A stretch of 64,000 nucleotides of DNA from Macrostomum lignano (lineage: Eukaryota): the NCBI GenBank assembly GCA_002269645.1, contig NIVC01001143.1, positions 1 to 64,000 on the forward strand, in the 5' to 3' direction. A model generated the notes under the pieces. The model searched no databases. It saw only the letters and a program-made list of their open reading frames with translations, and was not told the origin of the DNA. Each line of letters opens with the position of its first letter. The first letter of the stretch is position 1. The position numbers and the translations under genes were made by a program. Positions 22,201 to 64,000 of this stretch are shown one piece after another.

Positions 22201-25200
22201 CGCGGGGACTCCGTATCGCTAATTTCTAAAAATGGTGAAGATCCCGACGGTTTTTGTGCATAGTTTATAACTAAATGGCTCTTTTTTGAGTTAGCTCATG
22301 ACAGGTTGAAAGCAAAAATCAAAAAAGCAGAAGAGTGTAAATGAGAATTGGTGCTCGGCTGGATGTTGATTTGTTCTTCAGCTTACCAAGAGGGTTGCCA
22401 AACACCTCCAGTTCCATAATTTTGATAGTTGACGAGTTGTGTAAGCCTGCCAGGCCAACCAAGCTGGCTACCTGGAAAGTTTAGGAATGCTGCCCTGTCT
22501 AGAACATTATTTTACCAAACCCTTGAGCTCCATTTGTATTCATTTTATAAAAGTAAAGCACCTGACGGATCGCCACTCGCCACGGGTTCGGCATGAAGGT
22601 AGCCAGGTTCTGATCGACAAGAACGGCATCTGCTGACTGCCTGTAGGTCGAGTGATTTGACACGAAGACCGCCGTGAACTCATTCGGGTCCCTGTACTTA
22701 GCTGGAAATTGCGTTTAGAAGACAAATTTATGCTGTTTTGCGGCAGGAGAGTCCGTGGACTCAAAGGCCAAAACTACATGTAGAGTGCATTTCTCACCGC
22801 GATCGAACTTTGTAAATCCCCAAATGAGCACGAACTCAATCTGTCTCGGCGTCAAAAAGTTGATGGCAACCCACGGTGGGCCGGCTGCAGAGCCCGAGGC
22901 CTCGAAAGGGACACTGGGTATACTAAATGAGTCCCTCCAGCCGTCAATGATGCTCTCATTCACCGCTGAGCTGCCCGCCACCAGCTGGCGGAAGTGGATC
23001 GGCACGGCGGCCGGCCTGAACGGTGCGGCGTCTGCAAAGGCGGTGAAAATGACGGTGGAGCTGCCTGCTTCTAAAGATAAATTGATCGTTGATGGCTATG
23101 CTTCATCGCTGGATGACTCCATATAAACTCAGAAGCCAGACTCACCTGACCTGCAGCCATAGAGCATCCAGCGAGACTCAAAGCGCCTGGCATATAGTGT
23201 GGGAATGCCGTAGAGGCGAAATGCCAGGCCTGTCACCTCGGGGAACAGGCCAACAAACACTGTTGTCGTCATTTGAGCCGGCCCGTGAAAAACCTGCGTG
23301 TTTTTGTTTGTGTGCAGTGCACAGTGCAATTGGCTGGGGCCGGTTGTGTCGACTCTCGCACCTTTACTTGTACCCTTTTGGGCGTTTCTAATGGCTTTGC
23401 CGCTTCTGGCTCGCTGGCCCCCGCTTGCAATCCAGGCTGCTCTGGGGCAGTGGCATAATTTTTCTTGCAAGTTATTTACGACCTAAGCCTGTGACTGGGA
23501 GCCTTTTCGCTCTGAAAGCCCCACCCCAATCCCCATTCCTACCCCTTTCCCAACCCGTACCCCAACCCCTACATACCTAATCCCTTTCCCAATCCGTACC
23601 CCTATCCATACCCAACCCCTACCCAATCTCTACCTCTACCCCAACCCCTACTTAGCCCCTACCCCAATCCCAACCCCAACCCCTACCCCAACCCCTACCC
23701 CAACCCCTACCCAAACCACAATCCCAACCCCCTACCCCAACCCCTACCCCAACCACAATCCCAACCCCCTACCCCAACCCCTACCCCAACCACAATCCCA
23801 ACCCCTACCCCTACTCCAATCCAAATCAAACCTCTACACCCCAACCCCCACCCCAACCCCAACCCCAACCCCTACATGTACCTCTACCCCTACCCCCTAC
23901 CCTTTCGGCTCTCCGAGTCGTTCATCCTTTAAGCTGAGCCGTAGATTCACTCACCAGAGGATAATGAGCGAAAGAGACTTTGTCCACCGAATGGGAGAAG
24001 GCGAATCTCAAGCGATTTTCTTTACTATACCGAATCAAGACACGATCCGAGGCGCCTTGCATTGCCACCACAAAGACTGTGACGGAGCTGGAGAACGTGG
24101 CCTGAAACACAAATTTTAGTTTATACTCGTAGCTGCTAGCTGGTATAGTGATCGTTTAGGTCCACCTGCGGCCCTCGAAGCCTCTCTATCCGGCCCGGGT
24201 CCTTTAAAACCGCTCTCTCTTCTCCTCTCTCCCCTCTTCTCTATTTTCTCTCTTTTCTCCTCTCCTCTCATCTCTCCTCTGCTTTCTTCTCTCCTCTCAT
24301 CTCTCCTCTTATCTTCTCTCTCATCTCTTCTATCATCGTATCTCGTATCTCTTATCTCGCCTCTCATCTCTTCTCTCATCTCTCATCTCCTCTTTCCTCT
24401 ACTCTCTCCTCTATTCCCTCTTTCTTTCTCATCTGGCCCGCAGCAATGATTTCACTAAGAGAAAAGTATTTCTATATACTTAGCAAATTATATCAAAGTG
24501 GTAATCATCAGAACGGTTAGTTAATCTCCAGGCGAAAGCACACAAAAGTACCTGCTTGTACTCCGCAAAGTCGCAAGTGGAGAATCTGAGAGCCGGAGCC
24601 CAGAATCCCAACTGCCGGTCATCTGAAAGCATTTCAATTTTTTCCTGGTTAGCTTTCGTCGGTCATAAAACTTGTTGAGTCTAACACACAACAATCGCAG
24701 AACTTACTGGGCAAATCGAACATGACATGAGCCCTATAGTTGTCCGCGTCGCTGCCGAAGACAGTGTACCCTATGTTTTGAATGTCCAGCGCGTGTAACT
24801 GATTGCCAACTTCAAGGCTGGCTAGCAGAGACTCCCGGACACTGAGGTTGAGACTTCTTGTTGTCCATGACAGTTTGACGGGCTGAAAGTCGTCTGTATC
24901 TGCTGTCACAGAGCTCCCTGCCAGCAGTGACATTACAGACAGCGTGGCAAGGCTGGCAGAGTATCCTGATCGGACAAAATACTCCAGAGCTGACACATGA
25001 GATCCATTGCCACCGATGACAACTTCCCAGCGGGTCTGTGTTGAGTGCAAGGAAGTGGGATTTGTCATTGGTTGGCTTGCAGGGGGGGGGTTGTGAGCAC
25101 TGATGGCAGCCGTCCTGCAGCCGGTGAGGAGGCGAGTACACTCACACAATCACTGACCCACACTCACACATTCACTCACTCACACTCACACATTCACTCA

Positions 25201-28200: not shown

Positions 28201-31200
28201 TTCAGATCAACCAACAGCCGCCAAAAGTGTTCCGGGGTTGCTGTTGTAACTTTCTGCGTGTTGAGGATGGCTGCAAAATCGCTTGTGTATTTTGGAGCTG
28301 CCATTCTGATGCCATTGAAGTAGTAGGCCTTCTGGTAGCCCACAGAGTAGATATCGGTTATGTCTTCATTGTCAGCCAGGTAATTCGGCACTGAAAGTGC
28401 GGCGGTATTCGAAATTTAGAGTAGAATTTACCGCAGCCCGGCACCTCTATCCGAATATGGAAAATGCCGAAGGCCTACCGCAGCGAAAGCCTCCGCTATT
28501 CTGATTGAAGCACTGCTCGTTTCCTGAGGCTGTGCAGCAATTGAAACTCCCGCTGCCGAATGCTGAAATATTTCAGGAAACGTTTTTTTAATCAGCGATT
28601 GGGTATCGAAAAGTGAGCTTGAAAGCCTTGGAAGTAACTAACATGAGCTGCACTGGCTGTATGTCGATGGAAGGTTGTTGAAAGAGGTCCGGCAGGTGCT
28701 CTGGGTCAAGCAGGCGTTGCCGCTGGCGGCCATGCCGATGCCAAAGTCGAAGAACTGGTGATCGTTAGAAATCATGACGCACTTCACGTGGTCTGCAGAG
28801 GATTCAAATGGGGTTATTGTCAAATAAAGTTACTCTTAGTAGTCAAGAAGGGGAATAAGTACTCACCTGCGTATCTGATGGTTGTGCCGGCTACTGAGTA
28901 GTTCACATGCCGCCTGTAGTGACTACTTGACGCCTGAAAACTGACCGACACGTCTCCAGGAATTCCGCCGAACAGCGGCTTCATGCAGCCTGCGATTTGG
29001 GGCACGAAATTTCTCGTTAGTTACTTTCCATTTGACTGCCAGTGACATTTGGACTGCCAGTGACATTTTGACTCCCAGTGACATTTTGACTGCCAGTGAC
29101 ATTTTGACTCCCAGTGACGTTTTGACTCCCAGTGACATTTGGACTGCCAGTGACATTTTGACTCCCAGTAACATTTGGACTCCCAGTGACATTTTGACTC
29201 CCAGTGACATTTGGACTCCCAGTGACATTTTGACTCCCAGTGACATTTGGACTCCCAGTGACATTTGGACTGCCAGTGACATTTTGACTCCCAGTGACAT
29301 TTTGACTGCCAGTGACATTTTGACTCCCAGTGACGTTTTGACTCCCAGTGACATTTGGACTGCCAGTGACATTTTGACTCCCAGTAACATTTGGACTCCC
29401 AGTGACATTTTGACTCCCAGTGACATTTGGACTCCCAGTGACATTTTGACTCCCAGTGACATTTGGACTCCCAGTGACATTTGGACTGCCAGTGACATTT
29501 TGACTCCCAGTGACATTTGACTGCAGTGACATTTTGATTGCCAGTGACATTTTGATTGCCAGTGACATTTTGATTGCCAATGACATTTTGACTGCTAGTG
29601 ACATTTTGACTGCTAGTGACATTTTGACTGCCAGTGACATTTTGATTGCCAGTGACATTTGACTCCCAGTGACATTTTGACTCCCAGTGACATTTTGACT
29701 GCCAGTGACGTTTGACTGCCACCTGTCATTTGATTGATCAAACAGAGGCCACCTTTTACGGCCAGCAAGCGTGGACCTCACTCACTCCAAGCCCAAATCC
29801 TAATATAAATCGTCGATAGAGCTGGTCAAATGTCACTTGCGGGTTTTCGGGCAACATAAGCAAGTGTGACTTTCAGAATCAGCTGATAAGTCGATTACCT
29901 TTCGTAGTCGAGAAGCGATAGTACACCACTTGATTTGTTAGTGCATAACCGTTGCACGTTCCCGTTGAGTAATCTCTTAAATACATATGCTTTTCGGTGT
30001 CCATCGATGTCTCGAACTGGTCAGTGACGTTCGGATCCTGGTTCTGAAGCTTCAGGACCTGCCAGTAGTTCATAGGCCTGTAGAAATTCTGAGCATTGGT
30101 CCAAGCACAAGCCTGGTTCCTGACCAGCACCAGCTCCTCCGACTGCGCACCTGCATCTGAAGGATTCAAGATTCTTGCTTATACTGCTTGCCCCACCACA
30201 GCTGGCCTGCTTGCCTCAACCTTCCTGCTTCCTCACCCTCCTGCTTGCCCCACCACAGCTGGCCTGCTTGCCTCAACCTTCCTGCTTCCTCACCCTCCTG
30301 CTTGCCCCACCACAGCTGGCCTGCTTGCCTCAACCTTCCTGCTTGCCTCACCCTCCTGCTTGCCCATCTACAAACCCGGTTTGACGCCGCCTACCTGGAT
30401 ACTTTTTCACTTCGCAGACGAACGGCAGCTGCTGGGAGCAGTCAACGTCAATCACCAGGGCCAAGTGGGCGTCCAGGGCGGCGCAGTTCGAGGGCGGCCG
30501 GCCCATGTAGAAGGTGCCGGGCTCCGGCTCGCTGCCGTCGCTCCACTCCCATTGGTTGGTGGAGTTCCTCCGCAGGCCGACCAGGAACGGGCCGATGTCT
30601 CTATCGTTGAATCTGCAAAGTTCAGAAGCGGAGATGTCCGTGCAGTGCACGGGCAAAGCACTGCTGGGGAAGCGGGCTGGCATACCCAGGAAACAGGATG
30701 AGGAAGTTTCTCTCCAGCACAGTCTTGGCGTTCAGCAGGCTGGCGGCGACGCCACCCCAGCTCTGCTCAGCGCAGATCTGGCTGGCAACTGCCCAGGTTG
30801 TCGCGGTGTCCTCGATGTGCCAGCAGACGCTGGCCGAGCTGACCCAGCCTGGCGGGCAAGCTGCGGTGCGGTTTGATGCGGCTGATAAAAATTTGTTTTT
30901 ATTACTCACAAGTAGCAAACGTAGACATTTATTTCTGTGTTATGTTCCAGTGCCTGGATTCCAGTTCTCGTGCTTTGATTCCAGCTCTAGTGCCTTGAGT
31001 ATTGTACGAGAATGTACATTACGGTGGCGTTTTTATAAGTCTCGCAGCAACTTAGCTCAACCCAACTCGACCCAACTCAACCCAACTCAACCCAACTCAA
31101 CACAACTCAACCCAGCTCAACCCAACTCAACACAACTCATCCCAGCTCAACACAACTCAACCCAGCTCAACCCAACTCACGTTTAACAGGACAGCCCCGA

Positions 31201-50158: not shown

Positions 50159-50861
50159 CAAACGCACTCAAATTACCTTAATATCGAAGGCCCGAATTCA
50201 AACTGCATGGGCAATATTGAATATCAGCTACTTCTACCCGTAATTAAGCGAGCTTCTTGGCCCAAAAGCAAGCTAAAAGCATCGGTAGGAGCTTCTGTTG
50301 GAATCGATCACTGGATGCCAACAGCATGCGGAGCACCCGGGCGCTGAGCTGATGTGCTAATTAAAATACCTGAAGTCCCAGGCAGGCTACAAATTGGCTA
50401 CAATCTGAATGCAGCAGTAAAAAGCCTCTTTCCCCTAGTAGCAGAAGAAGCCAAGCCGTATTATGATTGTAGCGAATGCTGTGAATTGAAAATTCAGCAA
50501 AATTGTTACTGAGCCAGAAATTTTACTGTTACTGAGCGCATTCATGTGCATAGCTACAGCTCTGCAAACTCAGCCAGATACCTGGGAAAGGTCTGATAAA
50601 ATTATTTCCTCTTTATTTTTGCACAAATACATTTTAAGAACGGAAAACGCGCAGGTTAAAAAAGACCGCCGGAAAAATGGCGGCCGGTCCGTGCGTAAAA
50701 ACCAAAATACGTAAATACGTAAATACGGATTCGCTGCTATTCGGGGGTCTGCGAACCGGCTGCGCGCAGATTACAGTGCATGGCGGGAGATCTTGGGGGA
50801 GGCTTGAAACTTGGGTTGCGGAGAGGTCGTGAGGGAGGGGTGATTCCCCGTGCGACGGAGA

Positions 50862-51392
50862 GGTGAGGAAGAGGGGTGAGGGAGAGGGGTGAGGGAGAGG
50901 GGTGATGAAGAGAGGTGAGGGAGAGGGGTGAGGGAGAGGGGTGAGGGAGAGGGGTGATGAAGAGAGGTGAGGGAGAGTGGTGAGGGAGAGGGGTGAGGGA
51001 GAGGGGTGAGGGAGAGAGGTGAGGGAGAGTGGTGAGGGAGAGGGGTGAGGGAGAGGGGTGAGGAAGAGAGGTGAGGGAGAGGGGTGAGGAAGAGGGGTGA
51101 GGGAGAGGGGTGAGGGAGAGGGGTGAGGGAGAGGGTGAGGGAGAGGGGTGAGGGAGAGAGGTGAGGGAGAGGGGTGGGGAAGAGGGGTGAGGGAGAGGGG
51201 TGAGGAAGAGAGGTGCGGGAGAGGGGTGAGGGAAAGGGGTGAGGAAGAGGGGTGAGGGAGAGGGGTGAGGGAGAGGGGTGAGGAAGAGGGGTGAGGGAGA
51301 GGGGTGAGGGAGAGGGGTGAGGGAGAGAGGTGAGGGAGAGGGGTGAGGAAGAGGGGTGAAGGAGGTGCGAGAGAGAGGGTTGAGGGGAGAGG
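50862..51392. repeat. 13-bp purine-rich minisatellite GAGAGGGGTGAGG
   Basis: Tandem array. Confidence 0.92.
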
Positions 51393-51728
51393 GGTTGCAA
51401 GATTAGTCAAGATTAGAGAGCCCTAACTAACTTAGGAGGTCAAGAGACACAGGTGAGAGACAGGGAGGCATAGATGAGGCAGAGAAAAAACCTGCCTATC
51501 GCGCATTGAAAACGCAAGAGAACAAAAAGAGAGCAAGAGACCTCAGCTCAGCTGGCAAGAATGCACAAAGCATTGAGCAGAGCTGAGCAGGCAGAGCAAA
51601 AGCAGACATGTAACGGATAAAACAGTGAAAGAGCCGTATTGAAAAGAATCCGCTCGAATCTAAGCCATAAGTACACAATTTCGTAAACGGCTTGAAGAAG
51701 CCACACGCCCGGCGCCCCGGACCCGCTC

Positions 51729-54062
51729 CTAGGCCTCCGCGCCCTCGCTGTTGCAGACTTCGCTGACGGTGGAGTACGAGAGCCCCGAGGGGGCCGGGGA
51801 CGCGGCACCGGAAGAACAAGCCAATGGAACCGATGCCGAATCGGAGGCACCGGCGCCTTTTTGCTCAACATCGTCGCCCTCGCCCTCACATTCGCTGGCG
51901 CCAAAGCGCGGCAGCAGGAGGCCGCAGGCGACGTCGGGTGGTACGACGACCCGGCCGAGGCGCAGGGGCTGCAACGTCGAAGCTTCCTGGGCTTTCACGG
52001 TGCCGAGGGCGGCGTCTTCGGCGGCCTGCAGAGCGGCGTCGGCGTCGGCAGGCTCGGCAAAGGTCACGAAGCCGAAGGCCGGCTTGCCCTGGGCTGCCCG
52101 CACCAGCCAGAGGTCGACAACGCGACCATGGACGCTGAGGCGCTGGCGCAGCTCCGCCTCGGTGGCCTCCGAAGGCGCGTTGGCCAGGTAGAGCCGGTGC
52201 CGCCAGTCCGGGCACTCGCGGACCAGCTCTCGCAGCAGCGGGTCCGCGCCGGGCTGGTTGGCCGGCCGGCTGACGCACAGGCGCTTCCCGACTGAGCGAG
52301 TGAGGCACCAGAGTGACAGCTGAGTGACAGCTGAGTGACAGCTGATGAGCTGAGCGAGTGAAGCATCAGAGTGACAGCTGATGAGCTGAGCGAGTGAGGC
52401 ACCAGAGTGACAGCTGATGAGCTGAGCGAGTGAGGCATCAGAGTGACAGCTGATGAGCTGAGCGAGTGAGGCACCAGAGTGACAGCTGATGAGCTGAGCG
52501 AGTGAGGCATCAGAGTGACAGCTGATGAGCTGAGCGAGTGAGGCATCAGAGTGACAGCTGATGAGCTGAGCGAGTGAGGCATCAGAGTGACAGCTGATGA
52601 GCTGAGCGAGTGAGGCATCAGAGTGACAGCTGATGAGCTGAGCGAGTGAGGCATCAGAGTGACAGCTGATGAGCTGAGCGAGTGAGGCATCAGAGTGACA
52701 GCTGATAAGCTGAGCGAGTGAGGCATCAGAGTGACAGCTGATGAGCTGAGCGAGTGAAGCATCAGAGTGACAGCTGATGAGCTGAGCGAGTGAGGCACCA
52801 GAGTGACAGCTGATGAGCTGAGCGAGTGAAGCATCAGAGTGACAGCTGATGAGCTGAGCGAGTGAGGCACCAGAGTGACAGCTGATGAGCTGAGCGAGTG
52901 ACGCATCAGAGTGACAGCTGATGAGCTGAGCGAGTGACGCATCAGAGTGACAGCTGATGAGCTGAGCGAGTGAGGCACCAGAGTGACAGCCATCATTCAA
53001 GTCACAACCCAAGACACTCACGCAGCGACACAGTGTTGAGGCTCTCAATGGCCAACAGGGCGGCCTCGGGCAGCAGGAAATTGGCAAAAGCGAAGCCCCT
53101 GTTGATGCCGCCGGGCCGATGCCGATGGGCCAGGAGGGTCACCGGTCCGAACTCGGACAGCAGGTCGGTGAGCTGCGCGTCGGTGACGCGGGCAGGCAAG
53201 TTGCCGATGTACACCCGGCTGAGCAGCACCACGGCGTAGGCGCGGTTCAGCCTCGGCTGGCTCTGCAGTTTGGGTGGGAGATGCGCTACAGAGCGATTCT
53301 GGTGGCGTTACAGGGCTGAGATGTCAAGGCTCACTGGGGGAATTGCTGAGATGTCAAGGCTCACTGGGGGAATTGCTGAGATGTCAAGGCTCACTGGGGG
53401 AATTGCTGAGATGTCAAGGCTCACTGGGGGAATTGCTGAGATGTCAAGGCTCACTGGGGGAATTGCTGAGATGTCAAGGCTCACTGGGGGAATTGCTGAG
53501 ATGTCAAGGCTCACTGGGAGAATTGCTGAGATGTCAAGGCTCACTGGGGGAATTGCTGAGATGTCAAGGCAAATATGATTCACGAAGGGGGCACTAGATT
53601 GCTAATTCTGCAATAAAGGTTTAGTGCAGCTTTTAGTGCAACAACATATCCGTAAGCAATATTCGGAGAGCAAAGACATCTGCCCAGCTGACTGGCAGCT
53701 CACATTCAGTCTGGCTCGAGTCAATAAGATTACTGAGTCCTAATGCTAACGCTTTCAACACTATCCATGAGAGTCTCATGAGAGCGAATCGCACGAATAC
53801 CCAAATTTTGGCTCCGTCGGAATCGAACTCAGGGGCCGTAGCGACCCGGCCGCCGCCTTACCAGCTCCGGCCCGGCCCGGCACAGCGCGAACCGCACAGT
53901 CTCCCGCCTGGCGAACTGCGCCGCCCGACGCCTGGCGCGCCGCTGGCCAGCGTCGCCTGCGGGCAGCTCGAAAGTCGCAACGGCGCGACCGCGGCTGCCG
54001 ACGGCGACTCCGGAGCCGAAAGCCAGCTCGCCGACCTGGACGAAGGAGTCAGCTGACCCGTG
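51729..54062 (-). CDS. Two-RRM RNA-binding protein (ELAV/Sxl-like layout); exons 53862-54062, 53022-53262, 51729-52291
   Basis: RRM1 has RNP2 VYIGNL and RNP1 RGFAFANF, with LNTVSLLGKRLCVSRP across the junction. RRM2 has LYLANA and PAFGFVTF. Splice phases 0/0 and 1/1 match. No Met codon in the 334 spliced sense codons. Confidence 0.85.
52293..52990. repeat. 36-bp minisatellite CAGAGTGACAGCTGATGAGCTGAGCGAGTGAGGCAT
   Basis: About 19 copies filling RRM gene intron 52292-53021. Confidence 0.95.
53316..53570. repeat. 30-bp minisatellite GCTGAGATGTCAAGGCTCACTGGGGGAATT
   Basis: Tandem array in RRM gene intron 53263-53861. Confidence 0.93.
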
Positions 54063-54075
54063 CTGAAGATTGAGC
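54063..54075 (-). promoter_or_regulatory. Unpaired splice acceptor (candidate trans-splice site) at the 5' end of the RRM ORF
   Basis: ctcaatcttcag|CAC GGG is in frame with the RRM ORF; no ATG-bearing exon with a donor was found in 54063-54875. Confidence 0.55.
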
Positions 54076-54875
54076 AAGCTTATGATGCGTACTTGCGTGT
54101 GGATACTGGTTTGCACTTTTAGGCGCGGATTAAGACAGGATTAAAGTAGGCTACGGACAATTTGAAGAGTGGTTGACAGTTTCTTCTGTTGAGACAAGAA
54201 TCTAAAATTTCACAAACAGGAGCTGAACACCTGATTATCCGCGCAAGTCACCTTGGCTTAATGAAAGTCACAAACAAAGACCAAAACAAAGAGTTTATTT
54301 TCCTTCAACGGAAGCGCTCTGCACTTAGCAAACAGCGCCCAGACAGGTATATTTACATTTATTTAGCATCGCATAGTTGCATAAAAAGCCTATCAAGTGC
54401 CTACTAACAGTAGCTAGGGCAGAGAATTACACCGGCTAAAATAACAGAGTTTATCCGAAAAGAGTAACGCAAAAATGATGAGAGAGGAGCAAAAGGTAAA
54501 CAAGTTAATTTCCGGGGATGATACAAAATTGATTAGCTTAATTATTGGAGTTTGTCGCAATATGCAGTCGGACAGGCCAAGCAAACTGATAATGAGTCAG
54601 GGCAGTCGGTAACCGCTAAGCACAACACTGAAATGCGGATATAAATAGCATTATAATTATAGTACATTAGTATAGTACAGGGAGCTGCCCATTCTGCCTG
54701 AATCAATGAGCGACAACCAGGCAGACATTGCGGTGAAAAAATGCCGCATAGAAATAAAGGAGTTTTTAAGTAGCAAACGGGATTACACGACAGAGCAGGT
54801 CGGCGAAACTAATGCAGATAATGAGCGACACGAGGCGAGGACGCCGAGGGCACCGTGGCAGCGGCTAAGGAAGCT

Positions 54876-57800
54876 TCAGGCGCCAACCTCAACCTCGATG
54901 TCGGAGCCCTCCTCCTCCTCGATCTCCGAGTCGGACAGCGGCACCATCTGGCTGTGCGGGTGGTGGTGGCCGATGCCGCCCACCACGGCGGACGGGATGG
55001 CCTGGATGATCTGCGGCATGCCGGCGCCAGCGGCTGCGGCGGCCCCGGCAGCTGCGGCCTCCAGCTTGCGCTGGGCGTGCACCGACTCGAAGTCGGGGAC
55101 GACGGCCTCGCGCCGCTCGTACAGCGCGTTGACGAAGAATCGCAGCGAGGGCGGCACGGACTCGATGATGTCGTCAACCGGCTCGTTGTTGGTGGCCAGC
55201 TGGTAGCCCAGCGAGCGCAGCACGGCCGTGTCGTCCGAGATCTCGAAGGTGTGGTCGAAGGTGAACAGGTACTCCAGCTTGTCCTTGGTGATGTTGCAGT
55301 CGGTGACAGTGTTGGGCGGGCAGGAGATCACCAGGAACGGCAGGTGCAGCAGGGAGGCTTTAGGCGCCTGGCCGTACATCTGCTCATTCTCCCGGTTCCG
55401 CTTGACCAGCTGCTTGAAGGCGATGAGCTGGCACACCTGAGGGAGACGGGAGGGATCAAAAGTCAGGCTGCAGTGGGAGCACAGATCCCACCAACAGTCA
55501 GGCTGCAGTGGGAGCACAGATCCCATTAACAGTCAGGCTGCAGTGGGAGCACAGATCCCACCAACAGTCAGGATGCAGTGGGAGCACAGATCCCACCAAC
55601 AGTCAGGATGCAGTGGGAGCACAGATCCCATCAACAATCAGGCTGAGGTCACGCGGAGGGATTCAACACAAGGGAAGGCACCCAGTCAGCACCCAGCAGA
55701 TGTCAGGCCAACCAACCTTCTCGGAGATCTCGTTGGCCTTCTCCCGAATCCGCTTGAGCCGCTCCTCCCGCTCCTCCTGCAGCTTGCGGCACTGCACGAT
55801 GGCGTTGAGCGGCATGCCGACCCAGGTGATCTCCTTGTTGTCCCGGCGAATGACGCCCATGGCCAGCAGGACGTTCAGAGTGTCGTAGGCCCTGCGGCGG
55901 ATGTTCTTCTGATGGTAGATGAGCTGGTCCTGCGGCATCAGTGGGTGCTCAGCCGCGAATTCGTGCACGAGCTCGTCGGCCACCTCATAGTAGGAGGTGA
56001 TGGTCTTGTTCTGCAGCTTCTCAACCACTGCGCCGGCGTACTTGCGCAGGCCGGAGCCGCCGCGGGCCCCCGAGCCCGCGTAGTCGTCGTCGTCTATCCA
56101 GTCCTCGGCGCCAGCCGGGCCGGCGGAGCCGCGGGCGCGCGGCGCGAAGCCCAGGCCGAAGCCGGCGCCGCCGCGCACGGAGGTCGGCGTGACGGCCTTC
56201 AGCTTGGGGTCGGGCAGGAAGCCGCGCGCCTGAACGGCGCCACTGCCGAGCTTCCGCTGTTGCTGCTGCTGCATCGGGAGGCTGCGCACCTGCAATGCAA
56301 AGTCAAATCAATCAGGAGATATTGACAGACCGTTGACAATGACAGTAAAAATTAGACCTGTAATACATGATATTTGTTAGAATTGATAAGACAACGATAG
56401 TGCCGGTGATTTTACACGATTTGCAGTTTTACACGACTACTGTCAGCTTGCGCCTACTGATAAGTAGAAAGTATAGAGTGTGGCGCGAAAATTATAAGTC
56501 GAAAGTCTATTTATTTTTCGAACGAAATGAATTATTATGAAAGTTACTCAGCTAAAAGTGAATTCAGTCCAACCTGAATGATCCGCTGCGCCCCGGCAGC
56601 GGTGATGACGCGCAGAGTCTGGCCGCCCTGCTGCTGCATTCCCCCCGGGCCGACCTGCCGGACAATCTGCTGCTGCTGCTGCTGCTGCTGAGACCGCGGC
56701 GGCAGCGTGATGATCTTGATGCTGCCTGTGCCGGACTGCTGGCTCCCCGCTGCCAGCTTCTGCACCGGCAGGCGAATCACCCGCACCGGCTTGCCGCTGC
56801 CGTCTCCGACGCCGCCAGCGCCGGCACTGCTGACGGTTGGAGCCGCCATGGCGACCGAGTGCCCGGCCGATCCGGCCGTTGTCTGAATGCGGATCACGCG
56901 GGGCTGCGACGCGGCCGCCGACGGATGAACCTAGCAGGTAGGGCAGTTGGCGGGGTCAGAGAAAGGTCAAATTTGGCAACACTTGGCAACGATCGACACC
57001 ACTTAGCAACATACCTATCGACACCAGTTAGCGACATATCTTATCGACACCAGTTAGCGACATACCTATCGACACCACTTACCGACATACCTTATCGACA
57101 CCACTTAGCAACATACCTATCGACACCAGTTAGCGGCATACCTTATCGACACCACTTAGCAACATACCTATCGACACCAGTTAGCGGCATACCTTATCGA
57201 AAGCACTTAGCGAGATAGCTATCGACACCAGTTAGCGGCATACTTTATCGAAACCACTTAGCGAGATAGCTATCGACACTAGTTAGCGGCATACCTTATC
57301 GACACCACTTAGCGAGATAGCTATCGACACCAGTTAGCGGCATACCTTATCGACACCACTTAGCGACATACCTATTGACAACAGATAGCGACATACTTAT
57401 CGACAACAGATAGCGACATACCTATCGACACCAGTCAGCGACATACCTATCGACACCACTTACCGACATACCTTATCGACACCAGTTAGCAACATACCTA
57501 TCGACACCACTTAGCGAGATAGCTATCAACACCAGTTAGCGGCATAACCTATCGACACCACTTAGCGACATACCTATTGACAACAGATAGCGACATACCT
57601 ATCGACAACAGATAGCGACATACCTATCGATAACAGATAGCGACATACCTATCGACACCAGTGAGCGGCATACCTTATCGACACCAGTCAGTGACATACC
57701 CATTAAAGCCCTGCTTCTCACATACCTGAATGACAGTTGGCTGTCTGGCTTCGCCGCCGGGCGACTCTTCAACCCCAGTAGTTGTGGGCTCCCGCTTGAG

Positions 57801-57926
57801 CTGGCCGCCAGAGCTTTCTCGAAGCTGCGCAGAAGCAAAGGCGGAGGACTCGGCAGCATTGCCAACAACAACTTCTTCAGCCACATCTGACTCCATAAAG
57901 TCCAGCGATTCTACATCAACATCCAT
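54876..57926 (-). CDS. Dp: Transcription factor Dp (E2F dimerisation partner, TFDP family), about 563 aa; exons 57726-57926, 56574-56930, 55717-56289, 54876-55436
   Basis: DNA-binding domain TSYYEVADELVHEF...NIRRRAYDTLNVLLAMG...KEITWVGMP; coiled coil QLIAFKQLVKRNR; LPFLVI...DCNITKDKLEYLFTFDHTFEISDD. All junctions are phase 0. Confidence 0.95.
55462..55640. repeat. 35-bp minisatellite CAGTCAGGCTGCAGTGGGAGCACAGATCCCACCAA
   Basis: About 5 copies in Dp intron 3. Confidence 0.9.
56992..57695. repeat. 25/26-bp minisatellite (ATCGACACCACTTAGCGACATACCT-type)
   Basis: Variable-unit array filling Dp intron 1. Confidence 0.9.
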
Positions 57927-57999
57927 GATTGCTATTGGGTTTGAACTGCAAGTAGAGGAATGATGTATTTATTTATGAGCTTATTTTTAATTAATTCCT

Positions 58000-58482
58000 T
58001 TGTTTAGTATCTGGGTCTCAAATTTTGAATGCAAACCATAAACTTATAATGCCATTGGCATCAGTCATCAAAGTGGTGCAAAGTATCTCAGCAGTAAATG
58101 TGTCTGAGGCATCAACTTTGTTATCAGTGGGTCTTTCCCCAACCTTTCTAATGCCATACTAGCACTAAAGGATGCCAAGGCCATATGGGCAGCCCTCATC
58201 TCTGATGTCTCAGAGCTGGACTTGTTAATGACTTTTTTGGCTAGGCTCTACAGGTAGGGGAACTACAAGAATAGTACAACCAACTATGTGCGATTGAATG
58301 AAATTGAAAACTGTGACCCACTCACTACCCACCTGCCCTACCATTTGTATAGGTTGCTGCAGTGCACATGCTGGTTCTCTTCCACCATGAGGTCGTTGAT
58401 CACTTGCCAGGTGGTGCTCTATGTAATCTGCTAAACAATAGTTCCCAATTGGCTGCTGCTGCTCCCAAGGGCAATGTTGCAT
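58000..58482 (-). mobile_element. Possible highly decayed LINE reverse-transcriptase remnant
   Basis: YIEHHLASDQRPHGGREPACALQ loosely resembles the L..LL...QHGFR.GRSC.TQL region of non-LTR RTs; weak. Confidence 0.3.
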
Positions 58483-59469
58483 ATGGGGTGTCTTGCAGTA
58501 CTAGATGCTAAAATTCCTCCTAAACGCTAAAAATGTCATTTTACTTTGCAAGTATGTTTCTTAAAAAAACCATCTCTTAAAGTATATCATTTTTTAATAT
58601 TACAATTTATTTTGATTGTAAACAAAAATAAAATTTTAGTTATAACTCAAAATTACTAATGTATAGTTTTTAGGGATTAAAAGCCAAAAAATACTTCAAA
58701 CCTAAATGGTTCAAATTGAAATTACTAACTTCCTTCTTTCCTTCCTAAATATGGCAAAGGTTAGGACATAAGAATAGAAAATCCATATAAGAAATACATG
58801 TAAAAATTAATATAGGTAGATTAAAGAATTCTATTTGGAGGGGCTAAAAATGGGTGCTGACCAATTTGGCCACAAACAAATGTAGCAATTTGGTAACAGA
58901 AATTCACAAAAGCAAATTTGGCAAAAATCTAGTTGAATTTGGTGACAAAAATTAAGGAAGAATAATTGAGTATAATCTTATTATTTTTTTGGACAATTGT
59001 ATTAGTCATAGCATATTAGCTTTTCCTCTTTAGTTTTTTTCAAATTGACAATCAGATAAGATAATATGCATTTTGACTTGTCATTGCATCTGGGTAAAAG
59101 CTCTTTACAATGCCAATGGCTTTAAGGAAGCAGACAGAAATGCATAGCTAAATTTCAGGAAAAATGGAACTTTCACAAGCATTTAAAAAAACTGTATATG
59201 TAATTTTCTTTAACTTTAGCTATAACTCATTTTTAGTATATGGAATTATAATATAAAAGATTTGTTGCCAAATTTGCTTTTGCCAATTTGTCTATATTAA
59301 ATCTCTGTTGGCAAATTTGTGTGCATTAAAAAACAGGCATTAGCTAAATCTAAGTGCTTCTATACTTTTTGAAATAATTAAATGTTCTAAGATTAAAAAG
59401 ATAAACTTGAATTTTTTACAAAATTCCAACTGTTTTAGCAAATCAACTTTGTTATGTTAACCATGCTAT

Positions 59470-59900
59470 GTTGTCAAATGTATGCCACTGGCTTGTGATC
59501 AAAGCACTCAACAGAGGTGAACACCCAAAAGACATTGCAAGGTTGCTTAATATAGAAGAAAGATGGTTTACAGCATCCATTAGCATGTTGAAACCACTTC
59601 TGGCATAGGTTGCCTGTGAAAGGTGGCAATCACCAAGGCAAGTTGCTAGAGACACAGGTCCAACTGCTACTTAATGCAATTGAGACGTACCCTTTGTTGA
59701 CATTGCAGAAAAAGCAACAGCAATTGAAGGAACAGTTCCAGTTGGTTATCAGATTTGAGAAGAGCTCTGGAAAAGCAACTGAAAATTACCAGTATAGACG
59801 CTGACATTCCAGCGGTGCGCAACAACCCTTAGGTGGTTGTGAGAAGGCAAGAGTTTGCCATTGGCTCACAAGCATTTGGACCAAATTGATGCTTGTTGGA
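59470..59900 (+). mobile_element. Decayed IS630-Tc1-like transposase remnant
   Basis: LVIKALNRGEHPKDIARLLNI and GGNHQGKLLETQVQLLLNAIETYPLLTLQ resemble the HTH region of Tc1-like transposases. Confidence 0.45.
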
Positions 59901-61339
59901 CCAAATTAAATGCCGCTGCACCAGCCTTGCTACCATAGACAAAAGCTCTGTTACATTGGCAAACATATCCTGGATTAAATTCAATGCGCATAAGCCCAAA
60001 TGGGCTAGAAAAGCTATAACTAAGAGCAAACAAGCACCTAATGAATTTTTCTATAGTAAAGTAAAGTATATTTGTTAATACATTCAAAGTTGATTACATT
60101 GAATAATTTAAAATTAAAAAATGGAAAATATATTATAAAATTTCCTTTTATTAATTGTACTTTATTAGGTATAATTTTTGTTTTTAAATCTATGATGCAG
60201 TTTACAAAGGTATTTTTGTTTTACTCTACCTGTTTCAATTTTTTTAAATTTATAACTATGGCTATAGGAATCTATAGAATATGACAGCAACTACTATAGT
60301 TCTATAGTCTTAGCTGTAAGAGCAGCTCTCTATTGTAGGCATATCCATAGTTGTTATAAGCACCTATTTTACAATATTTGCCATAAGATCCCATAGCTAT
60401 AGCTGTAGCTACAGCAAAACACTGTTATTAATGCCAATTAACTAATTAACATTTATTAAAAGATTGGTATCCCAAAGTTCAGAAGGTGACATATATGCTG
60501 AGATTTCTTAGCATACAACATGGGTCTTACTATTTTTAACATACATCAGGGTATATCCTAGCATACATGACAGTCGATACATTGAGTCAAATGACAATTT
60601 TTTGGTATTGGCATACAAACCCAACATATAAATGAGGTCTCATCATTTTTCTAGCATTAAATCTAATATACACTAATATACAATCCAAACTATGGCTAGT
60701 ACCCAACATTGATAGTTAGAGTTAGAGCTTACTGGTTCTTCTAAAAATGGAAAACTAATTTTAAAAAAACTATTACTTACTTTTTAAGAAATTAAAATTA
60801 AATAAAAAATAGTTAAAAGAAACTAGGCCTAGTTTTTTTAACAATTCAATAAAAAAATTCTTTTTTACTTGTTATCTTTTAATCTTTAAAGATCTAACCT
60901 TAAAAAATTTAAAAGCATTAAATATTGGTCATAATATGTAAACTTTTTTTGCCATTTTTTTGTATACAATAAAAAGTCCATGGCATTGGTATACATAAGC
61001 TAGGGAAGCAATTTTCATTCCAGTGTATACTGGTATACAATCCTAACTGACTTCCAAGTACTGTTACAAATGTTTTGATGACTCTTGTTGTTTGTGATTT
61101 ATTTTTATCAATACAACAATTTGAACAATAGATAAAATGAATTTAAAAAGCTAAAAACATATTGCCATTGGGCATAGAAATTGGTTAAATAAAAAGTTAA
61201 TAAAGAATTGACTATATAAAATCAACTAGTAATATAGAAAAATTAGTAGAGAAAAGGTTATTAAAAGTTTCTCACTGATTGCATTGTATGATAAACATCA
61301 TTACAATAGCATTATTGCCTATAAGTTATGGAATGTCAT

Positions 61340-61995
61340 TCGCCTTCAATCATTATGGTTAATGTGTCATGGAAGGTCCCCTGCCTATGGCCTTTATCCC
61401 TATCGCCGTTGTCACCACTTGTATCAACCAGTGGCAGTGGGTGACTTCTAAGCACAAGGAGAGATGGGCTAATACCCACAACTGCCAGCAATCCTGTGCA
61501 GCTGTCCCCTGTCCTTTCTCTGCCTTGCGCAAGGCCCTGCTTAGACTCAATTGCAAGGACATCAAGATAATGACCATGGCCCTCTTGGGTCATGGCTGCT
61601 TTGCGAGGCATCGTCACCTCTAGGGGAAAATCCACAGTGAGGAATGCCCTTTTTGTCACTCTGGTGTTGAGAATGTGGAGCACTTCATCTGTGAATACCC
61701 CCTCTTTACTCATGACAAGCTCACCTACTTTAGCCTAAACCTAGACCTCTCCAACATTTTCAGGCCCAAGAATCTCTGCCAGTTCATCCATTAGCTAAGG
61801 GCTACCAGGCAAGCAACAATCCACCTCCTGGACTCTCCAGAGGGGGACCGCACTGTGGACACTGGCACCACTAGAACTCCTTGCGTGACACTGCAGCATT
61901 AGCTGCCCATGGTTGCCAGAGGCTAGCAAAGTATGTGGCAACGCCACCTTGCTGTCTCTGGACACACGGAACCCCCTGCAGCTAAGTCAAGAAGT
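61340..61995 (+). mobile_element. Old copy of the same non-LTR retrotransposon 3' end as 8029-8493
   Basis: Colinear homology; LLRLN...MALLGHGC...CPFCHSGVENVEHFIC; ends in TAAGTCAAG. Confidence 0.85.
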
Positions 61996-62180
61996 GATGG
62001 AAGGTCACTTTGCGACAGAGAATAGGCCTATCAAGTGCTATACATAGAATGCAAACAAGCAATAAGAAAGTGAAGCTGATTTTTGCGTGCAATATTTTTA
62101 TCTGGGCACTTGCCTTTGGGCCAGAAATGGTAATCTAATGAATAATTGCTGGAAGCAGTGCCATATACTAAGCTCAAAAT

Positions 62181-62368
62181 CAGTAGCGCAACCAGAAATT
62201 TTTCAAGGGGGGGGGGGCGGATTCTGAGGGTAAAGTCCCAGGAGGGGGGGCGGCGAAGGGGTGGCTGTTTTTGGCGAAAATTCGCTTGGTCCCCCCTTTG
62301 ATTTTTTTCAGTCCCCCGCCTAAGGGGGGGGCGACCGCCCCCCGCCCCCCCCCCTGGTTGCGCCACTG
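62181..62368. mobile_element. hAT-type MITE (188 bp)
   Basis: 15-bp TIRs CAGTAGCGCAACCAG / CTGGTTGCGCCACTG and 8-bp TSD CTCAAAAT (62173-62180, 62369-62376). Confidence 0.9.
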
Positions 62369-63277
62369 CTCAAAATAGATTATTAAGAGAATTGTTACAT
62401 ATGTATTTGCTATTAACAAGTCGCATTAGCGAAAATAATGAACTTAATGAAATTATTTGGCCTATATAATTAACGAAAATAATTTGGCCTAATTTGTCTA
62501 AGCCGTAAGGCCAAAAGAGAAATGACCGGCTTTGTGGTGAAATTGGCTTTACTTTTGTCCTATGCATTCCTTTAGCGGTTGGCATTCTATGTATAGCGCT
62601 CGATATTCTCTGCCTTGCAATTATTTAAAACGCACAAATAAAAATTGCCATGAAATTTTTTTTATATGATCTAGATTTTATCTATTTTAGAATCAGAAGA
62701 CACATAGAACTTTGGTTTTTAATGTATGAATAGATAATAGAATAAAGTTAACTGACTCGACGATCGATCGACAGTGTCCGACACATAGATCTTTATTCTA
62801 AAAGAGAATAACGCTCGATATATATATTCTCTGTATTCTAATGATCTATGATCCGACATTATTAAAAACATAGAAACAACTCAGAAAAACAAATACTCAA
62901 AAATGGTGCCTTTTATAGCGTTGCTAAAAATAAATTGCTTTATTTTTCATTTTATTAGATTTACTGTCTATTTTTTTTTTGTTTCAGGAACTAAATCAAC
63001 TACATTTAGAAGTCATCTTTGCATTTTTAACAAAGAATAAAGAAGCGTGTTTTACATTGCCTAGTCAGAATTTAGTATCAGCTTAGAATGATAGATAATG
63101 GTTGAAAAATGCTAAATATTAGAAAGTATTTCTTTTCAAAAATTGAATTTTGTGTACAATGACGGCAAGTTTTGAATGACCTCGAGGAAATTGATTTAAC
63201 GTTCATTCCTATGATTCGGGTAAAGTTTTCAACAATAGATTTTTTAATATTAAACCCTAATCATATAATTTCACTAA

Positions 63278-64000
63278 ATGGAATCAAGCGGAGCATCAAA
63301 CAGTTCAAGCCCAGGAGGTACTGCACCAAATTCGTCTCCGAGCTTTACTCCACCAATTAAAAGTGAACAGCTCCCTGTTGGAAAGAAGCTGACTAAAGAT
63401 CTTGTGTTGTCGAAGTCTAAAGGAGGGAGTCTCATTGAAATTAAAAAGATCGTTGTATGGTATGTTATTTTTTGTTTCTTTGATCTTTTATAGAAACACA
63501 TAGCTTTGGTGGGGAAATTTCTCTTCCATTTGTGAATGTATACTCAACAACATTAACAAGTCGCCACCTTTGAGAGTGCGCAGCAAATTCTAGCTCAGTA
63601 TTGACTTTTGAGTGACACAACTTGCGCCACGCGAATTGGGCTAGGTGTGGAGGGATCGGGAGGAGTGGAGGGCGAAGATTGGACGGATTGAAGCTTTCGC
63701 CTGGTTTTAATTTTTTTCAAGCATTTTTTAAATATCAAAATAGTTAGGTGATGTGTAGACGCTGATCAAAGACACTGCTCACTGGGGCAAAGGTTGGCGA
63801 CTTCAATGTTCCTGAGTATATTTTAATTTAATATTAAAAAGTGAAAATTAATCAGAAATTTAATCGAAAGCTGATTTTTCTGGGTTATTCTTTAATGGAA
63901 AACCAGAAAGGTTTAACTGTAGCAGATTTTGTTTGAAAACATGCTTTTAACCTACCTGTTTTGCTATTTTAGGGGACAGAAGATCACAGACTGCAGTATT
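63278..64000 (+). CDS. 5' exons (63278-63454, 63973 onward) of an unidentified gene
   Basis: MESSGASNSSSPGG...KKIV|GTATGG (phase 0) joins ttttag|GTEDHRLQY in frame; too short to identify. Confidence 0.5.

What the first reader, a model, noticed from the sequence alone, without database searches (positions are those of the whole stretch)
51729..57926. Met-less RRM gene 800 bp downstream of Dp: SL-supplied start codon in an operon, or a Dp-RRM chimera
Seen: the spliced RRM ORF is intact but has no ATG. It starts at an acceptor (54063) exactly in frame 0. Dp stops at 54876 on the same strand, with AATAAA signals near 54360 and 54295, and no ATG-plus-donor exon was found in between. Established: flatworm spliced leaders end in AUG, which can act as initiator Met, and trans-splicing resolves operons. 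Inference A: a dicistronic Dp-RRM unit whose RRM protein exists only after SL addition (M-HGSADSF...). Inference B: all Dp donors are phase 0, so splicing Dp exon 1, 2 or 3 to 54062 would give an in-frame Dp DNA-binding domain fused to two RRMs. Either links a cell-cycle factor to an RNA-binding protein.
Basis: partly seen in the sequence, partly recalled or inferred. Interest (0 to 1): 0.8.

Follow-up and report, generated by a model that had tools for sequence, protein, structure and literature searches.

The report
ATG-less PUF60-like gene behind Dp
A gene for a splicing-factor-like RNA-binding protein sits just behind a cell-cycle gene and has no start codon of its own, so it most likely borrows one from a trans-spliced leader RNA, a trick already documented in flatworms, though no RNA data were available to prove it here.

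Summary
On the minus strand a four-exon Dp gene (57926-54876, 563 aa) is followed 813 nt later by a three-exon ORF (54062-51729, 334 aa) that contains no Met codon. The ORF begins directly after a CTTCAG acceptor, and no ATG is contiguous with it upstream.

The "RRM gene" is more precisely a divergent PUF60/half-pint-like protein. It has the N-terminal helix, RRM1, the family linker and RRM2, but no UHM domain. Exon A is real coding sequence in frame 0, shown by codon-position GC pattern and by homology to PUF60 N-termini (0 of 2000 shuffles reach its score).

Joining a leader-borne ATG at 54063 gives a 335-codon ORF. Each of the 12 AGs upstream of it gives at most 19 codons.

The best reading is therefore inference A: a spliced-leader AUG initiates translation. 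This mechanism is known in flatworms (Cheng et al. 2006). It remains unproven here, because there was no RNA evidence, no SL gene in the window and no species identification.

Operon status is open. The distance from poly(A) signal to acceptor is about 230 nt, but the Dp/PUF60 adjacency is absent in the four other flatworm loci examined. The Dp-RRM chimera rests only on phase compatibility.

Verdict: a new, predicted member of a known kind, of modest interest.

The parts
57946..57951 (-). TTGCAG acceptor-like motif 19 nt upstream of the Dp ATG. It is a possible trans-splice site for Dp. A leader AUG joined here would be out of frame and would open a 10-codon uORF ending in a TGA that overlaps the Dp start.
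   Evidence: Read from the sequence. It matches the [T/C]TNCAG motif reported for M. lignano trans-splice sites. Its use is inferred, not shown.
57726..57926 (-). Dp exon 1 (ATG at 57926-57924; 201 nt; donor CAG|GTATGT)
56574..56930 (-). Dp exon 2 (357 nt; donor CAG|GTTGGA)
55717..56289 (-). Dp exon 3 (573 nt). It encodes the E2F_TDP winged-helix DNA-binding domain. The donor is AAG|GTTGGT.
   Evidence: The exon 3/4 junction is colinear with human DP1, whose sequence I supplied from memory.
54876..55436 (-). Dp exon 4 (561 nt). It encodes the DP dimerisation domain and an acidic tail. The TGA is at 54878-54876.
54063..54875 (-). 813-nt spacer with GC 0.43, against 0.56-0.75 in the exons. It comprises the Dp 3' UTR plus the intercistronic region or outron.
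   Evidence: There is no long ORF, and the only ATG+GT combinations have weak donors.
54358..54363 (-). AATAAA poly(A) signal candidate 1 for Dp
54294..54299 (-). AATAAA poly(A) signal candidate 2 for Dp, about 230 nt upstream of the acceptor
54063..54068 (-). CTTCAG acceptor, the predicted spliced-leader trans-splice site
   Evidence: It is the only [TC]TNCAG in the last 560 nt of the spacer, and the only AG in the last ~200 nt of the spacer where a leader ATG opens a long ORF (335 codons against 19 or fewer).
53862..54062 (-). PUF60-like exon A (201 nt, 67 codons, no ATG in any frame). It encodes the family's N-terminal motif and helix.
   Evidence: GC1/2/3 is 0.79/0.63/0.84 in frame 0 only. 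It scores 9.3 bits against an HMM of PUF60 N-termini, against -1.7 and -1.9 for the other frames, and 0 of 2000 shuffles reach it.
53022..53262 (-). PUF60-like exon B (241 nt). It encodes RRM1 (RNP2 VYIGNL, RNP1 RGFAFANF). Its acceptor is also phase 0.
51729..52291 (-). PUF60-like exon C (563 nt). It encodes the end of RRM1, the VSRPANQPGADPLL linker, RRM2, the LRLGRVVVPP motif and a 70-aa tail. The TAG is at 51731-51729.

Best explanation
The downstream gene encodes a divergent, UHM-less PUF60/half-pint-like RNA-binding protein whose genomic reading frame has no initiator codon.

Its pre-mRNA is trans-spliced at the CTTCAG acceptor (AG at 54064-54063) to the organism's spliced leader. Flatworm leaders end in AUG, so the junction ...AUG|CAC GGG UCA... 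places the leader's AUG in frame. Translation then gives M-HGSADSF..., 335 residues. Without trans-splicing no protein can be made from an AUG.

Shown here:
- the gene models;
- the absence of any contiguous ATG;
- the coding nature and frame of exon A;
- PUF60-family affinity;
- the uniqueness of the 54063 acceptor.

Inferred:
- that the organism is a flatworm with an AUG-terminated SL;
- that the site is actually trans-spliced.

Whether the pre-mRNA is a Dp-PUF60-like dicistron (an operon) or starts at its own promoter in the spacer is open. I put it at roughly even odds.
For: (1) The ORF is 334 codons across three exons with intact GT-AG introns and zero Met. The upstream in-frame extension hits a stop without an ATG.

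(2) Exon A is coding in frame 0:
- The GC3>GC1>GC2 pattern matches Dp and exons B+C in frame 0 only.
- It scores 9.3 bits against an HMM of PUF60 N-terminal regions, aligned colinearly over residues 9-62. The other frames score -1.7 and -1.9. None of 2000 shuffles reaches it (maximum 5.0).
- BLASTP to a nematode PUF60 orthologue starts at residue 40 in both proteins, so the ORF starts about where family N-termini start.

(3) GC jumps from about 0.4-0.5 to 0.68-0.82 exactly at the acceptor.

(4) A leader ATG joined at 54063 gives 335 codons. The 12 upstream AGs give 19 or fewer. CTTCAG fits the [T/C]TNCAG trans-acceptor motif of M. lignano.

(5) There is no ATG in any frame from 54357 through the first 604 nt of the mature model, so the leader AUG would be the only AUG a scanning ribosome meets.

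(6) Flatworm affinity:
- All 13 Dp hits are flatworms, and their alignments extend further than the one to human DP1.
- The PUF60-like protein shares three rare residues with one M. lignano protein alone among 120 family members.

(7) Literature:
- All reported flatworm SLs end in ATG (PMC12582326).
[quoted passage not shown] 2006).
- Macrostomum annotators keep the SL's final ATG for this reason (PMC10468722).
Against: - No RNA evidence of any kind was obtainable. Neither predicted protein has a near-identical entry in the protein collection, so no transcript contigs could be retrieved.
- No SL RNA gene lies in the window.
- The species was not identified. Dp core identity to human DP1 (50%) equals that to flatworms, so the phylum assignment is suggestive rather than proven.
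- This genome uses non-consensus donors (GTTGGT and GTTGGA in Dp), so the weak ATG+GT candidates in the spacer cannot be excluded on consensus alone.
- PUF60 N-termini vary in length, so a short extra 5' exon is compatible with the homology.
- The M. lignano relative has an ordinary genome-encoded ATG.
- The protein is very divergent, at 24-32% identity to family members depending on the alignment.
- For the operon part, the 813-nt gap fails the <=300-bp rule used for parasitic flatworms, and the gene pair is not conserved elsewhere.
Confidence: 0.55

Rival explanations
1. Conventional gene with an unrecognised 5' exon. A short ATG-containing exon in the 813-nt spacer (or further upstream) is cis-spliced to the 54063 acceptor from the gene's own transcription start.
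For: - In-frame ATG...GT combinations exist: ATG 54749/54728/54692 with AAT|GTACTA; ATG 54667 with GTGTTG, GTTACC or GTTTGC; ATG 54369 with GTTTGC.
- The genome tolerates GTTGGT and GTTGGA donors.
- PUF60 N-terminal extensions vary from about 12 to 100 aa.
- Flatworm acceptors are often shared between cis- and trans-splicing (PMC12582326).
Against: - All candidates have poor donors and AT-rich, Tyr/Asn/Ile-rich codons, in a gene with GC3 of 0.85.
- They start upstream of the last Dp poly(A) signal, inside the likely Dp 3' UTR.
- GC is flat and low throughout the spacer, with no exon-like island.
Confidence: 0.12
2. Dp-PUF60-like chimera. A Dp donor from exon 1, 2 or 3, all phase 0, is cis-spliced to 54062. 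This would give a fusion protein as a main product.
For: - All three Dp introns and exon A are phase 0, so any such join is in frame.
- Chimeric gene models at flatworm operons are common in annotations (PMC12582326).
Against: - The only support is phase compatibility, which has roughly a 10% chance given the usual excess of phase-0 introns.
- None of the 13 flatworm Dp homologues carries an RRM.
- The join would have to skip strong Dp acceptors and two AATAAA signals.
- The cited paper attributes such chimeras to misannotated polycistrons, and reports depletion of cis-reads at operon-resolving acceptors.
Confidence: 0.05
3. The locus makes no AUG-initiated protein. It is either a decaying or untranslated PUF60 paralogue (a pseudogene or non-coding transcript), or it is translated from a near-cognate non-AUG codon.
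For: - It is extremely divergent from the family, at 24-32% identity depending on the alignment.
- The UHM domain is missing.
- High GC makes open frames cheap. Other frames of the same exons carry only 0-2 stops each.
- No close homologue is known.
Against: - The frame is open through 334 codons and three exons with intact splice sites.
- Codon-position GC periodicity is retained.
- The RNP1 and RNP2 aromatic residues of both RRMs, the family linker and the LR[VL]G+..PP motif are all kept.
- The upstream in-frame stretch is only 26 sense codons before the stop, with no good near-cognate start in a favourable context.
Confidence: 0.15

Closest known systems
Flatworm mRNAs that use the spliced leader's 3'-terminal AUG as initiator (Cheng, Cohen, Ndegwa & Davis 2006, J Biol Chem 281:733; 'slORFs' in PMC9851317)
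   Same: The ORF begins at a 3' splice acceptor in phase 0, has no genome-encoded initiator, and has no in-frame stop after the junction. More than 40 S. mansoni cDNAs of this type have been reported.
   Different: The junction is only predicted here. The SL sequence and the species are unknown. This ORF also lacks Met entirely and sits in a ~580-nt genomic ATG-free run (about 900 nt counting spacer plus spliced mRNA).
SL-resolved operons of flatworms (S. mansoni, cestodes, Macrostomum lignano)
   Same: The two genes are on the same strand, and the downstream gene starts at an acceptor. The distance from poly(A) signal to acceptor is about 230 nt, comparable to the S. mansoni intercistronic mean of 233 nt. 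The pair is within the 1-kb rule used for M. lignano.
   Different: The stop-to-acceptor gap of 813 nt exceeds the 300-bp rule. No polycistronic RNA has been shown. The Dp/PUF60 pair was not found adjacent in four other flatworm loci.
PUF60 / half pint / RNP-6 (poly(U)-binding splicing factor 60)
   Same: It has the N-terminal AKKYAMEQSIK-type helix (here AAQFARRETVRFAL), tandem RRM1-RRM2, the V[GS]RP.N.P.A.P linker and the LRVG+..PP motif. The best continuous PDB match is PUF60 RRM1-2 (E 2e-17).
   Different: There is no UHM (third RRM) anywhere in the window. Identity is only 24-32% depending on the alignment. There is a 9-residue insert in RRM2.
Macrostomum lignano BOX15_Mlig033248g4 (P0270, 361 aa)
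   Same: It is the only one of 120 family members sharing Y[IV]GN, VSRP and Y[VL]AN with the window protein. It has a similar length. No UHM lies within 10 kb downstream.
   Different: Identity is 24-30% depending on the alignment. It has a genome-encoded ATG with no acceptor in front. RRM1-RRM2 lie in one exon. No Dp lies within 10 kb upstream.

Membership tests
SL-AUG-initiated flatworm mRNA | The main ORF has no genome-encoded in-frame AUG at or upstream of its 5' end. | tested here: met
   There are zero Met codons in 334, and the upstream extension reaches a stop without an ATG. Only weak ATG+GT candidates exist in the spacer.
SL-AUG-initiated flatworm mRNA | An AUG placed at the acceptor is in frame with the main ORF, with no intervening stop. 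| tested here: met
   ATG joined at 54062 gives 335 codons. The 12 upstream AGs give 19 or fewer.
SL-AUG-initiated flatworm mRNA | The organism has an SL RNA whose leader ends in AUG. | not testable with these tools
   No SL RNA gene is in the window, and the species was not identified. Flatworm affinity is only inferred. All reported flatworm SLs end in ATG.
SL-AUG-initiated flatworm mRNA | An SL-to-exon junction is observed in RNA. | not testable with these tools
   No transcript data for this organism could be reached. Spliced proteins could not be looked up, and no near-identical proteins are in the collection.
SL-resolved operon | The genes are on the same strand with a short intercistronic distance. 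| tested here: inconclusive
   The gap is 813 nt from stop to acceptor and about 230 nt from the last AATAAA to the acceptor. It fails the <=300-bp rule and passes the <1-kb rule.
SL-resolved operon | There is a polycistronic precursor and trans-splicing of the downstream cistron. | not testable with these tools
   No RNA data were available.
SL-resolved operon | The gene pair is conserved in related species (supportive, not obligatory). | tested here: not met
   No RRM or PUF60 lies within 10 kb downstream of Dp in Clonorchis or Heterobilharzia. No Dp lies within 10 kb upstream of PUF60-like genes in M. lignano or Paragonimus.
PUF60 / half pint | Tandem RRM1-RRM2 with the family-specific linker and flanking motifs. 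| tested here: met
   PDB phmmer aligns query 73-266 to PUF60 20-206 (E 2e-17). BLASTP to a nematode orthologue gives E 3e-31. See also alignment A2.
PUF60 / half pint | Conserved N-terminal helix (AKKYAMEQSIK). | tested here: met
   The match is weak but significant: 9.3 bits, with 0 of 2000 shuffles reaching it.
PUF60 / half pint | C-terminal UHM (third, protein-binding RRM). | tested here: not met
   tblastn with full-length nematode PUF60 (P0166), and with human PUF60 supplied from memory, finds no UHM anywhere in the 64-kb window. The same P0166 query does detect a UHM exon in Paragonimus.
DP (TFDP) transcription factor | E2F_TDP winged helix followed by the DP dimerisation domain. | tested here: met
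   Pfam PF02319 (E 3.2e-11) and PF08781 (E 2e-33), both above their cut-offs. Identity to flatworm Dp cores and to human DP1 (the latter supplied from memory) is about 46-51%, with one fragment at 61%.

The most novel reading that the evidence does not exclude
A paralogue of a 3'-splice-site/poly(U)-recognition factor (PUF60-like, UHM-less) is translatable only after spliced-leader trans-splicing, and it is co-transcribed with the cell-cycle factor Dp. This would make a feedback loop in which the output of the trans-splicing machinery gates production of a splicing regulator, coupled to E2F/DP expression in proliferating cells. The complete absence of Met codons and the long ATG-free run (~580 nt of genomic sequence) would then be selected features that make the leader AUG the sole initiation site.
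Probability: 0.07. Interest if true: 0.6.

Novelty: new member of a known kind. Interest (0 to 1): 0.3.

Why it matters
If confirmed, this is a very clean example of obligate leader-supplied initiation: a 334-codon ORF with no AUG anywhere.

- It is a useful test case for gene finders that demand an ATG. Such tools would drop or truncate this gene, which may be why no close homologue is annotated anywhere.
- It would add a splicing-factor paralogue to the list of SL-dependent genes.
- It does not reveal a new mechanism. Cheng et al. (2006) established one for flatworms, and later surveys treat it as routine.
- The Dp linkage is not conserved in the other flatworms examined, so a deep functional coupling of the cell cycle and RNA binding is not indicated.

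Tried and rejected
- **Transcript or orthologue retrieval.** The word-indexed search with the spliced 334-aa protein gave only two weak, non-orthologous hits. An exhaustive HMMER search with exon C gave generic multi-RRM proteins, none above 43% identity.
- **Species identification.** Dp hits are all flatworms at 37-49% identity, with none near-identical. M. lignano is in the collection but its PUF60-like protein is only 24-30% identical depending on the alignment, so the organism is not M. lignano.
- **SL RNA gene in the window.** Rfam gave nothing. The M. lignano SL with up to 3 mismatches gave nothing. A generic ATG|GTRWG scan with an Sm-like site found only coding-exon donors.
- **UHM exon downstream of the stop.** None was found by an ORF scan of 51760-47400 or by tblastn. 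A hidden longer gene model is therefore rejected.
- **ATG-bearing extension of exon B.** From my reading of the sequence, the in-frame stretch upstream of 53262 hits TAA after 15 codons with no ATG.
- **Synteny.** Five look-ups were made, of which one (P0203) found no record. The other four show no conserved Dp/PUF60 adjacency.
- **tRNA-like element in intron A.** ARAGORN was negative.
- **Bacterial promoter/terminator scan.** Not run, because it is inapplicable to a eukaryotic locus.

Full report
**Observation**

I read 51000-58500 on the minus strand and fixed the exon boundaries by script.

The Dp gene has four exons: 57926-57726, 56930-56574, 56289-55717 and 55436-54876. Their lengths are 201, 357, 573 and 561 nt, so all three introns are phase 0. 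The product is 563 aa, with Pfam E2F_TDP and DP domains above their cut-offs.

After the TGA at 54878-54876 comes an 813-nt spacer with GC 0.43. It carries AATAAA at 54363-54358 and at 54299-54294.

The second gene has three exons:
- Exon A is 54062-53862, with acceptor aatcttcAG|CACGGG and donor CTG|GTAAGG.
- Exon B is 53262-53022, with donor C|GTGAGT.
- Exon C is 52291-51729, ending in TAG.

Together they make 1005 nt and 334 codons, with two RRM_1 matches (E 1.4e-21) and not one Met codon. Reading upstream of 54062 in frame gives 26 sense codons and then a stop, with no ATG.

**Is exon A really coding, and in that frame?**

This matters because in 75%-GC sequence open frames come cheaply. 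Frame 1 of exon A is also open. Two independent tests say yes.

- Frame 0 of exon A has GC1/GC2/GC3 of 0.79/0.63/0.84. This is the same GC3>GC1>GC2 order as Dp (0.69/0.45/0.86) and exons B+C (0.73/0.52/0.85). The pattern rotates in the other frames.
- I built an HMM from the last 80 residues before RRM1 of the non-redundant sequences among 61 PUF60-family proteins. It aligns colinearly to residues 9-62 of the frame-0 translation at 9.3 bits. Frames 1 and 2 score -1.7 and -1.9. None of 2000 shuffles exceeds 5.0.

GC also steps from 0.4-0.5 to 0.68-0.82 exactly at the acceptor.

**What the protein is**

- A PDB sequence search gives PUF60 RRM1-RRM2 as the best continuous match. Query 73-266 aligns to chain 20-206 (E 2e-17), including the inter-RRM linker.
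- BLASTP to P0151, a Bursaphelenchus PUF60 orthologue (names), gives E 3e-31. The alignment runs from residue 40 in both proteins. The window ORF therefore begins at about the point where family members begin.
- A profile search recovers the PUF60/half-pint family, including trematode, cestode and Macrostomum members.
- The C-terminal UHM that defines full-length PUF60 is absent from the whole window. The same P0166 query does find a UHM exon in a Paragonimus locus.
- Among 120 family members, only M. lignano BOX15_Mlig033248g4 shares the rare Y[IV]GN, VSRP and Y[VL]AN states. It also lacks a nearby UHM. Its overall identity to the window protein is only 24-30% depending on the alignment, and it has a normal genome-encoded ATG.

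The gene is best described as a fast-evolving, UHM-less PUF60-like paralogue lineage. The RNP1 and RNP2 aromatics of both RRMs are kept, which argues for function.

**Where could an AUG come from?**

- The spacer holds nine ATGs, all opening ORFs of at most 41 codons.
- Every ATG...GT pair that would splice in phase 0 has a poor donor (GTACTA, GTGTTG, GTTACC, GTTTGC). All have AT-rich codons and start upstream of the last AATAAA. They cannot be excluded outright, because Dp itself uses GTTGGT and GTTGGA donors.
- From 54357 downstream there is no ATG on this strand for 578 nt of unique sequence.
- The spliced model has none in any frame for its first 604 nt (P about 0.016 by shuffling).
- I joined ATG at each AG in turn from 54257 down through exon A. 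The 54063 site gives 335 codons. The 12 AGs upstream of it give 19 or fewer. AGs inside exon A give shorter ORFs when they are in frame.
- That site is CTTCAG. It matches the [T/C]TNCAG motif enriched at M. lignano trans-splice acceptors (PMC8629364), and it is the only such motif in the last 560 nt of the spacer.

**Background from the literature**

- All reported flatworm SLs end in ATG (PMC12582326).
- According to PMC9851317, citing Cheng et al. 2006, the SL AUG is in frame in 28% of S. mansoni trans-spliced transcripts, and more than 40 cDNAs need it.
- Macrostomum genome annotators explicitly keep the SL's final ATG as a potential start (PMC10468722).

It remains a prediction.

**Is the organism a flatworm?**

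- All 13 Dp hits are trematodes or cestodes at 37-49% identity. Their alignments run about 50 residues further than the one to human DP1, although core identity is the same at 50% (human sequence from memory).
- The PUF60-like protein's three shared rare residues point to a Macrostomum protein.
- No near-identical protein exists in the collection, so the species is not represented there. No SL RNA gene lies in the window.
- Flatworm affinity is likely but not proven.

**Operon or not**

- The distance from the last AATAAA to the acceptor is about 230 nt. This is close to the S. mansoni intercistronic mean of 233 nt.
- The 813-nt gap is inside the 1-kb rule used for M. lignano but outside the 300-bp rule used for parasitic flatworms.
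- No PUF60 or RRM gene lies within 10 kb downstream of Dp in Clonorchis or Heterobilharzia.
- No Dp lies within 10 kb upstream of PUF60-like genes in M. lignano or Paragonimus.
- The pair is therefore not an ancient operon. Monocistronic trans-splicing from a promoter in the spacer is equally possible.

**Chimera**

Phase compatibility is real, but it is the only argument. No flatworm Dp homologue carries an RRM. The flatworm literature attributes such fused models mostly to misannotated polycistrons.

**Verdict**

- Interpretation A is the best-supported reading, at about 0.55.
- The operon is undecided, and interpretation B is unlikely.
- This is a new, predicted member of a known class, not a new mechanism.

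Noticed in passing
window 56992-57700, 55457-55645, 53315-53570, 52333-52990, 50858-51395: Four of the five introns of the two genes consist largely of minisatellite arrays: 25/51 nt x28, 35 nt x5.4, 30 nt x8.5 and 36 nt x18. A 13-nt x41 array lies just 3' of the PUF60-like gene. Similar arrays fill much of the window (ORF list).
   Followed up: partly
window 53830-53819 (minus strand): A Pol III B-box-like or tRNA T-arm-like motif, GAGTTCGATTCC, lies 30 nt into intron A in a GC-rich stretch. ARAGORN finds no tRNA. It may be a remnant of a tRNA-derived SINE.
   Followed up: partly
window 54357-53780 (minus strand): A 578-nt run of non-repetitive sequence without any ATG spans the last 295 nt of the spacer (expected ~4.8 ATGs, P about 0.004), exon A and the start of intron A. 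I cannot tell whether this reflects selection or chance. It was noticed post hoc.
   Followed up: partly
window 57951-57946 (minus strand): A TTGCAG acceptor-like site lies 19 nt upstream of the Dp ATG. If Dp is trans-spliced there, the leader AUG is out of frame and opens a 10-codon uORF overlapping the Dp start.
   Followed up: no
L004 33953-34192 (Paragonimus heterotremus, GCA_013368495.1): The annotated 353-aa PUF60 model (P0236) looks truncated. A UHM-like exon matches nematode PUF60 residues 710-788 about 5 kb past the annotated gene end. Several trematode PUF60 models of 312-398 aa may share this problem.
   Followed up: partly
window 58000-64000: An AT-rich block (GC 0.35) directly upstream of Dp contrasts with 0.47-0.63 in the rest of the window. 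Its content was not examined.
   Followed up: no
window 56900-56575 (Dp exon 2) and the start of exon 3: The Dp N-terminal half carries five copies of a short [IV]R[IV]I-type motif (VIRIQT, VRVIRLP, IKIITLP, LRVITAA, RIIQV) and a poly-Q run. Coverage of up to 84% by a Mesocestoides Dp suggests that flatworm Dp proteins share this extension.
   Followed up: no
window 586-33400 (minus strand): There are large ORFs and exons for N-glycosylation-site-rich extracellular proteins. By eye they include fibrinogen-like (5006-5500), C-type-lectin-like (6767-7123, 30348-30683) and discoidin-like (17706-18404, 24649-25149) domains. Several exons end in ...GYP..|GT.
   Followed up: no
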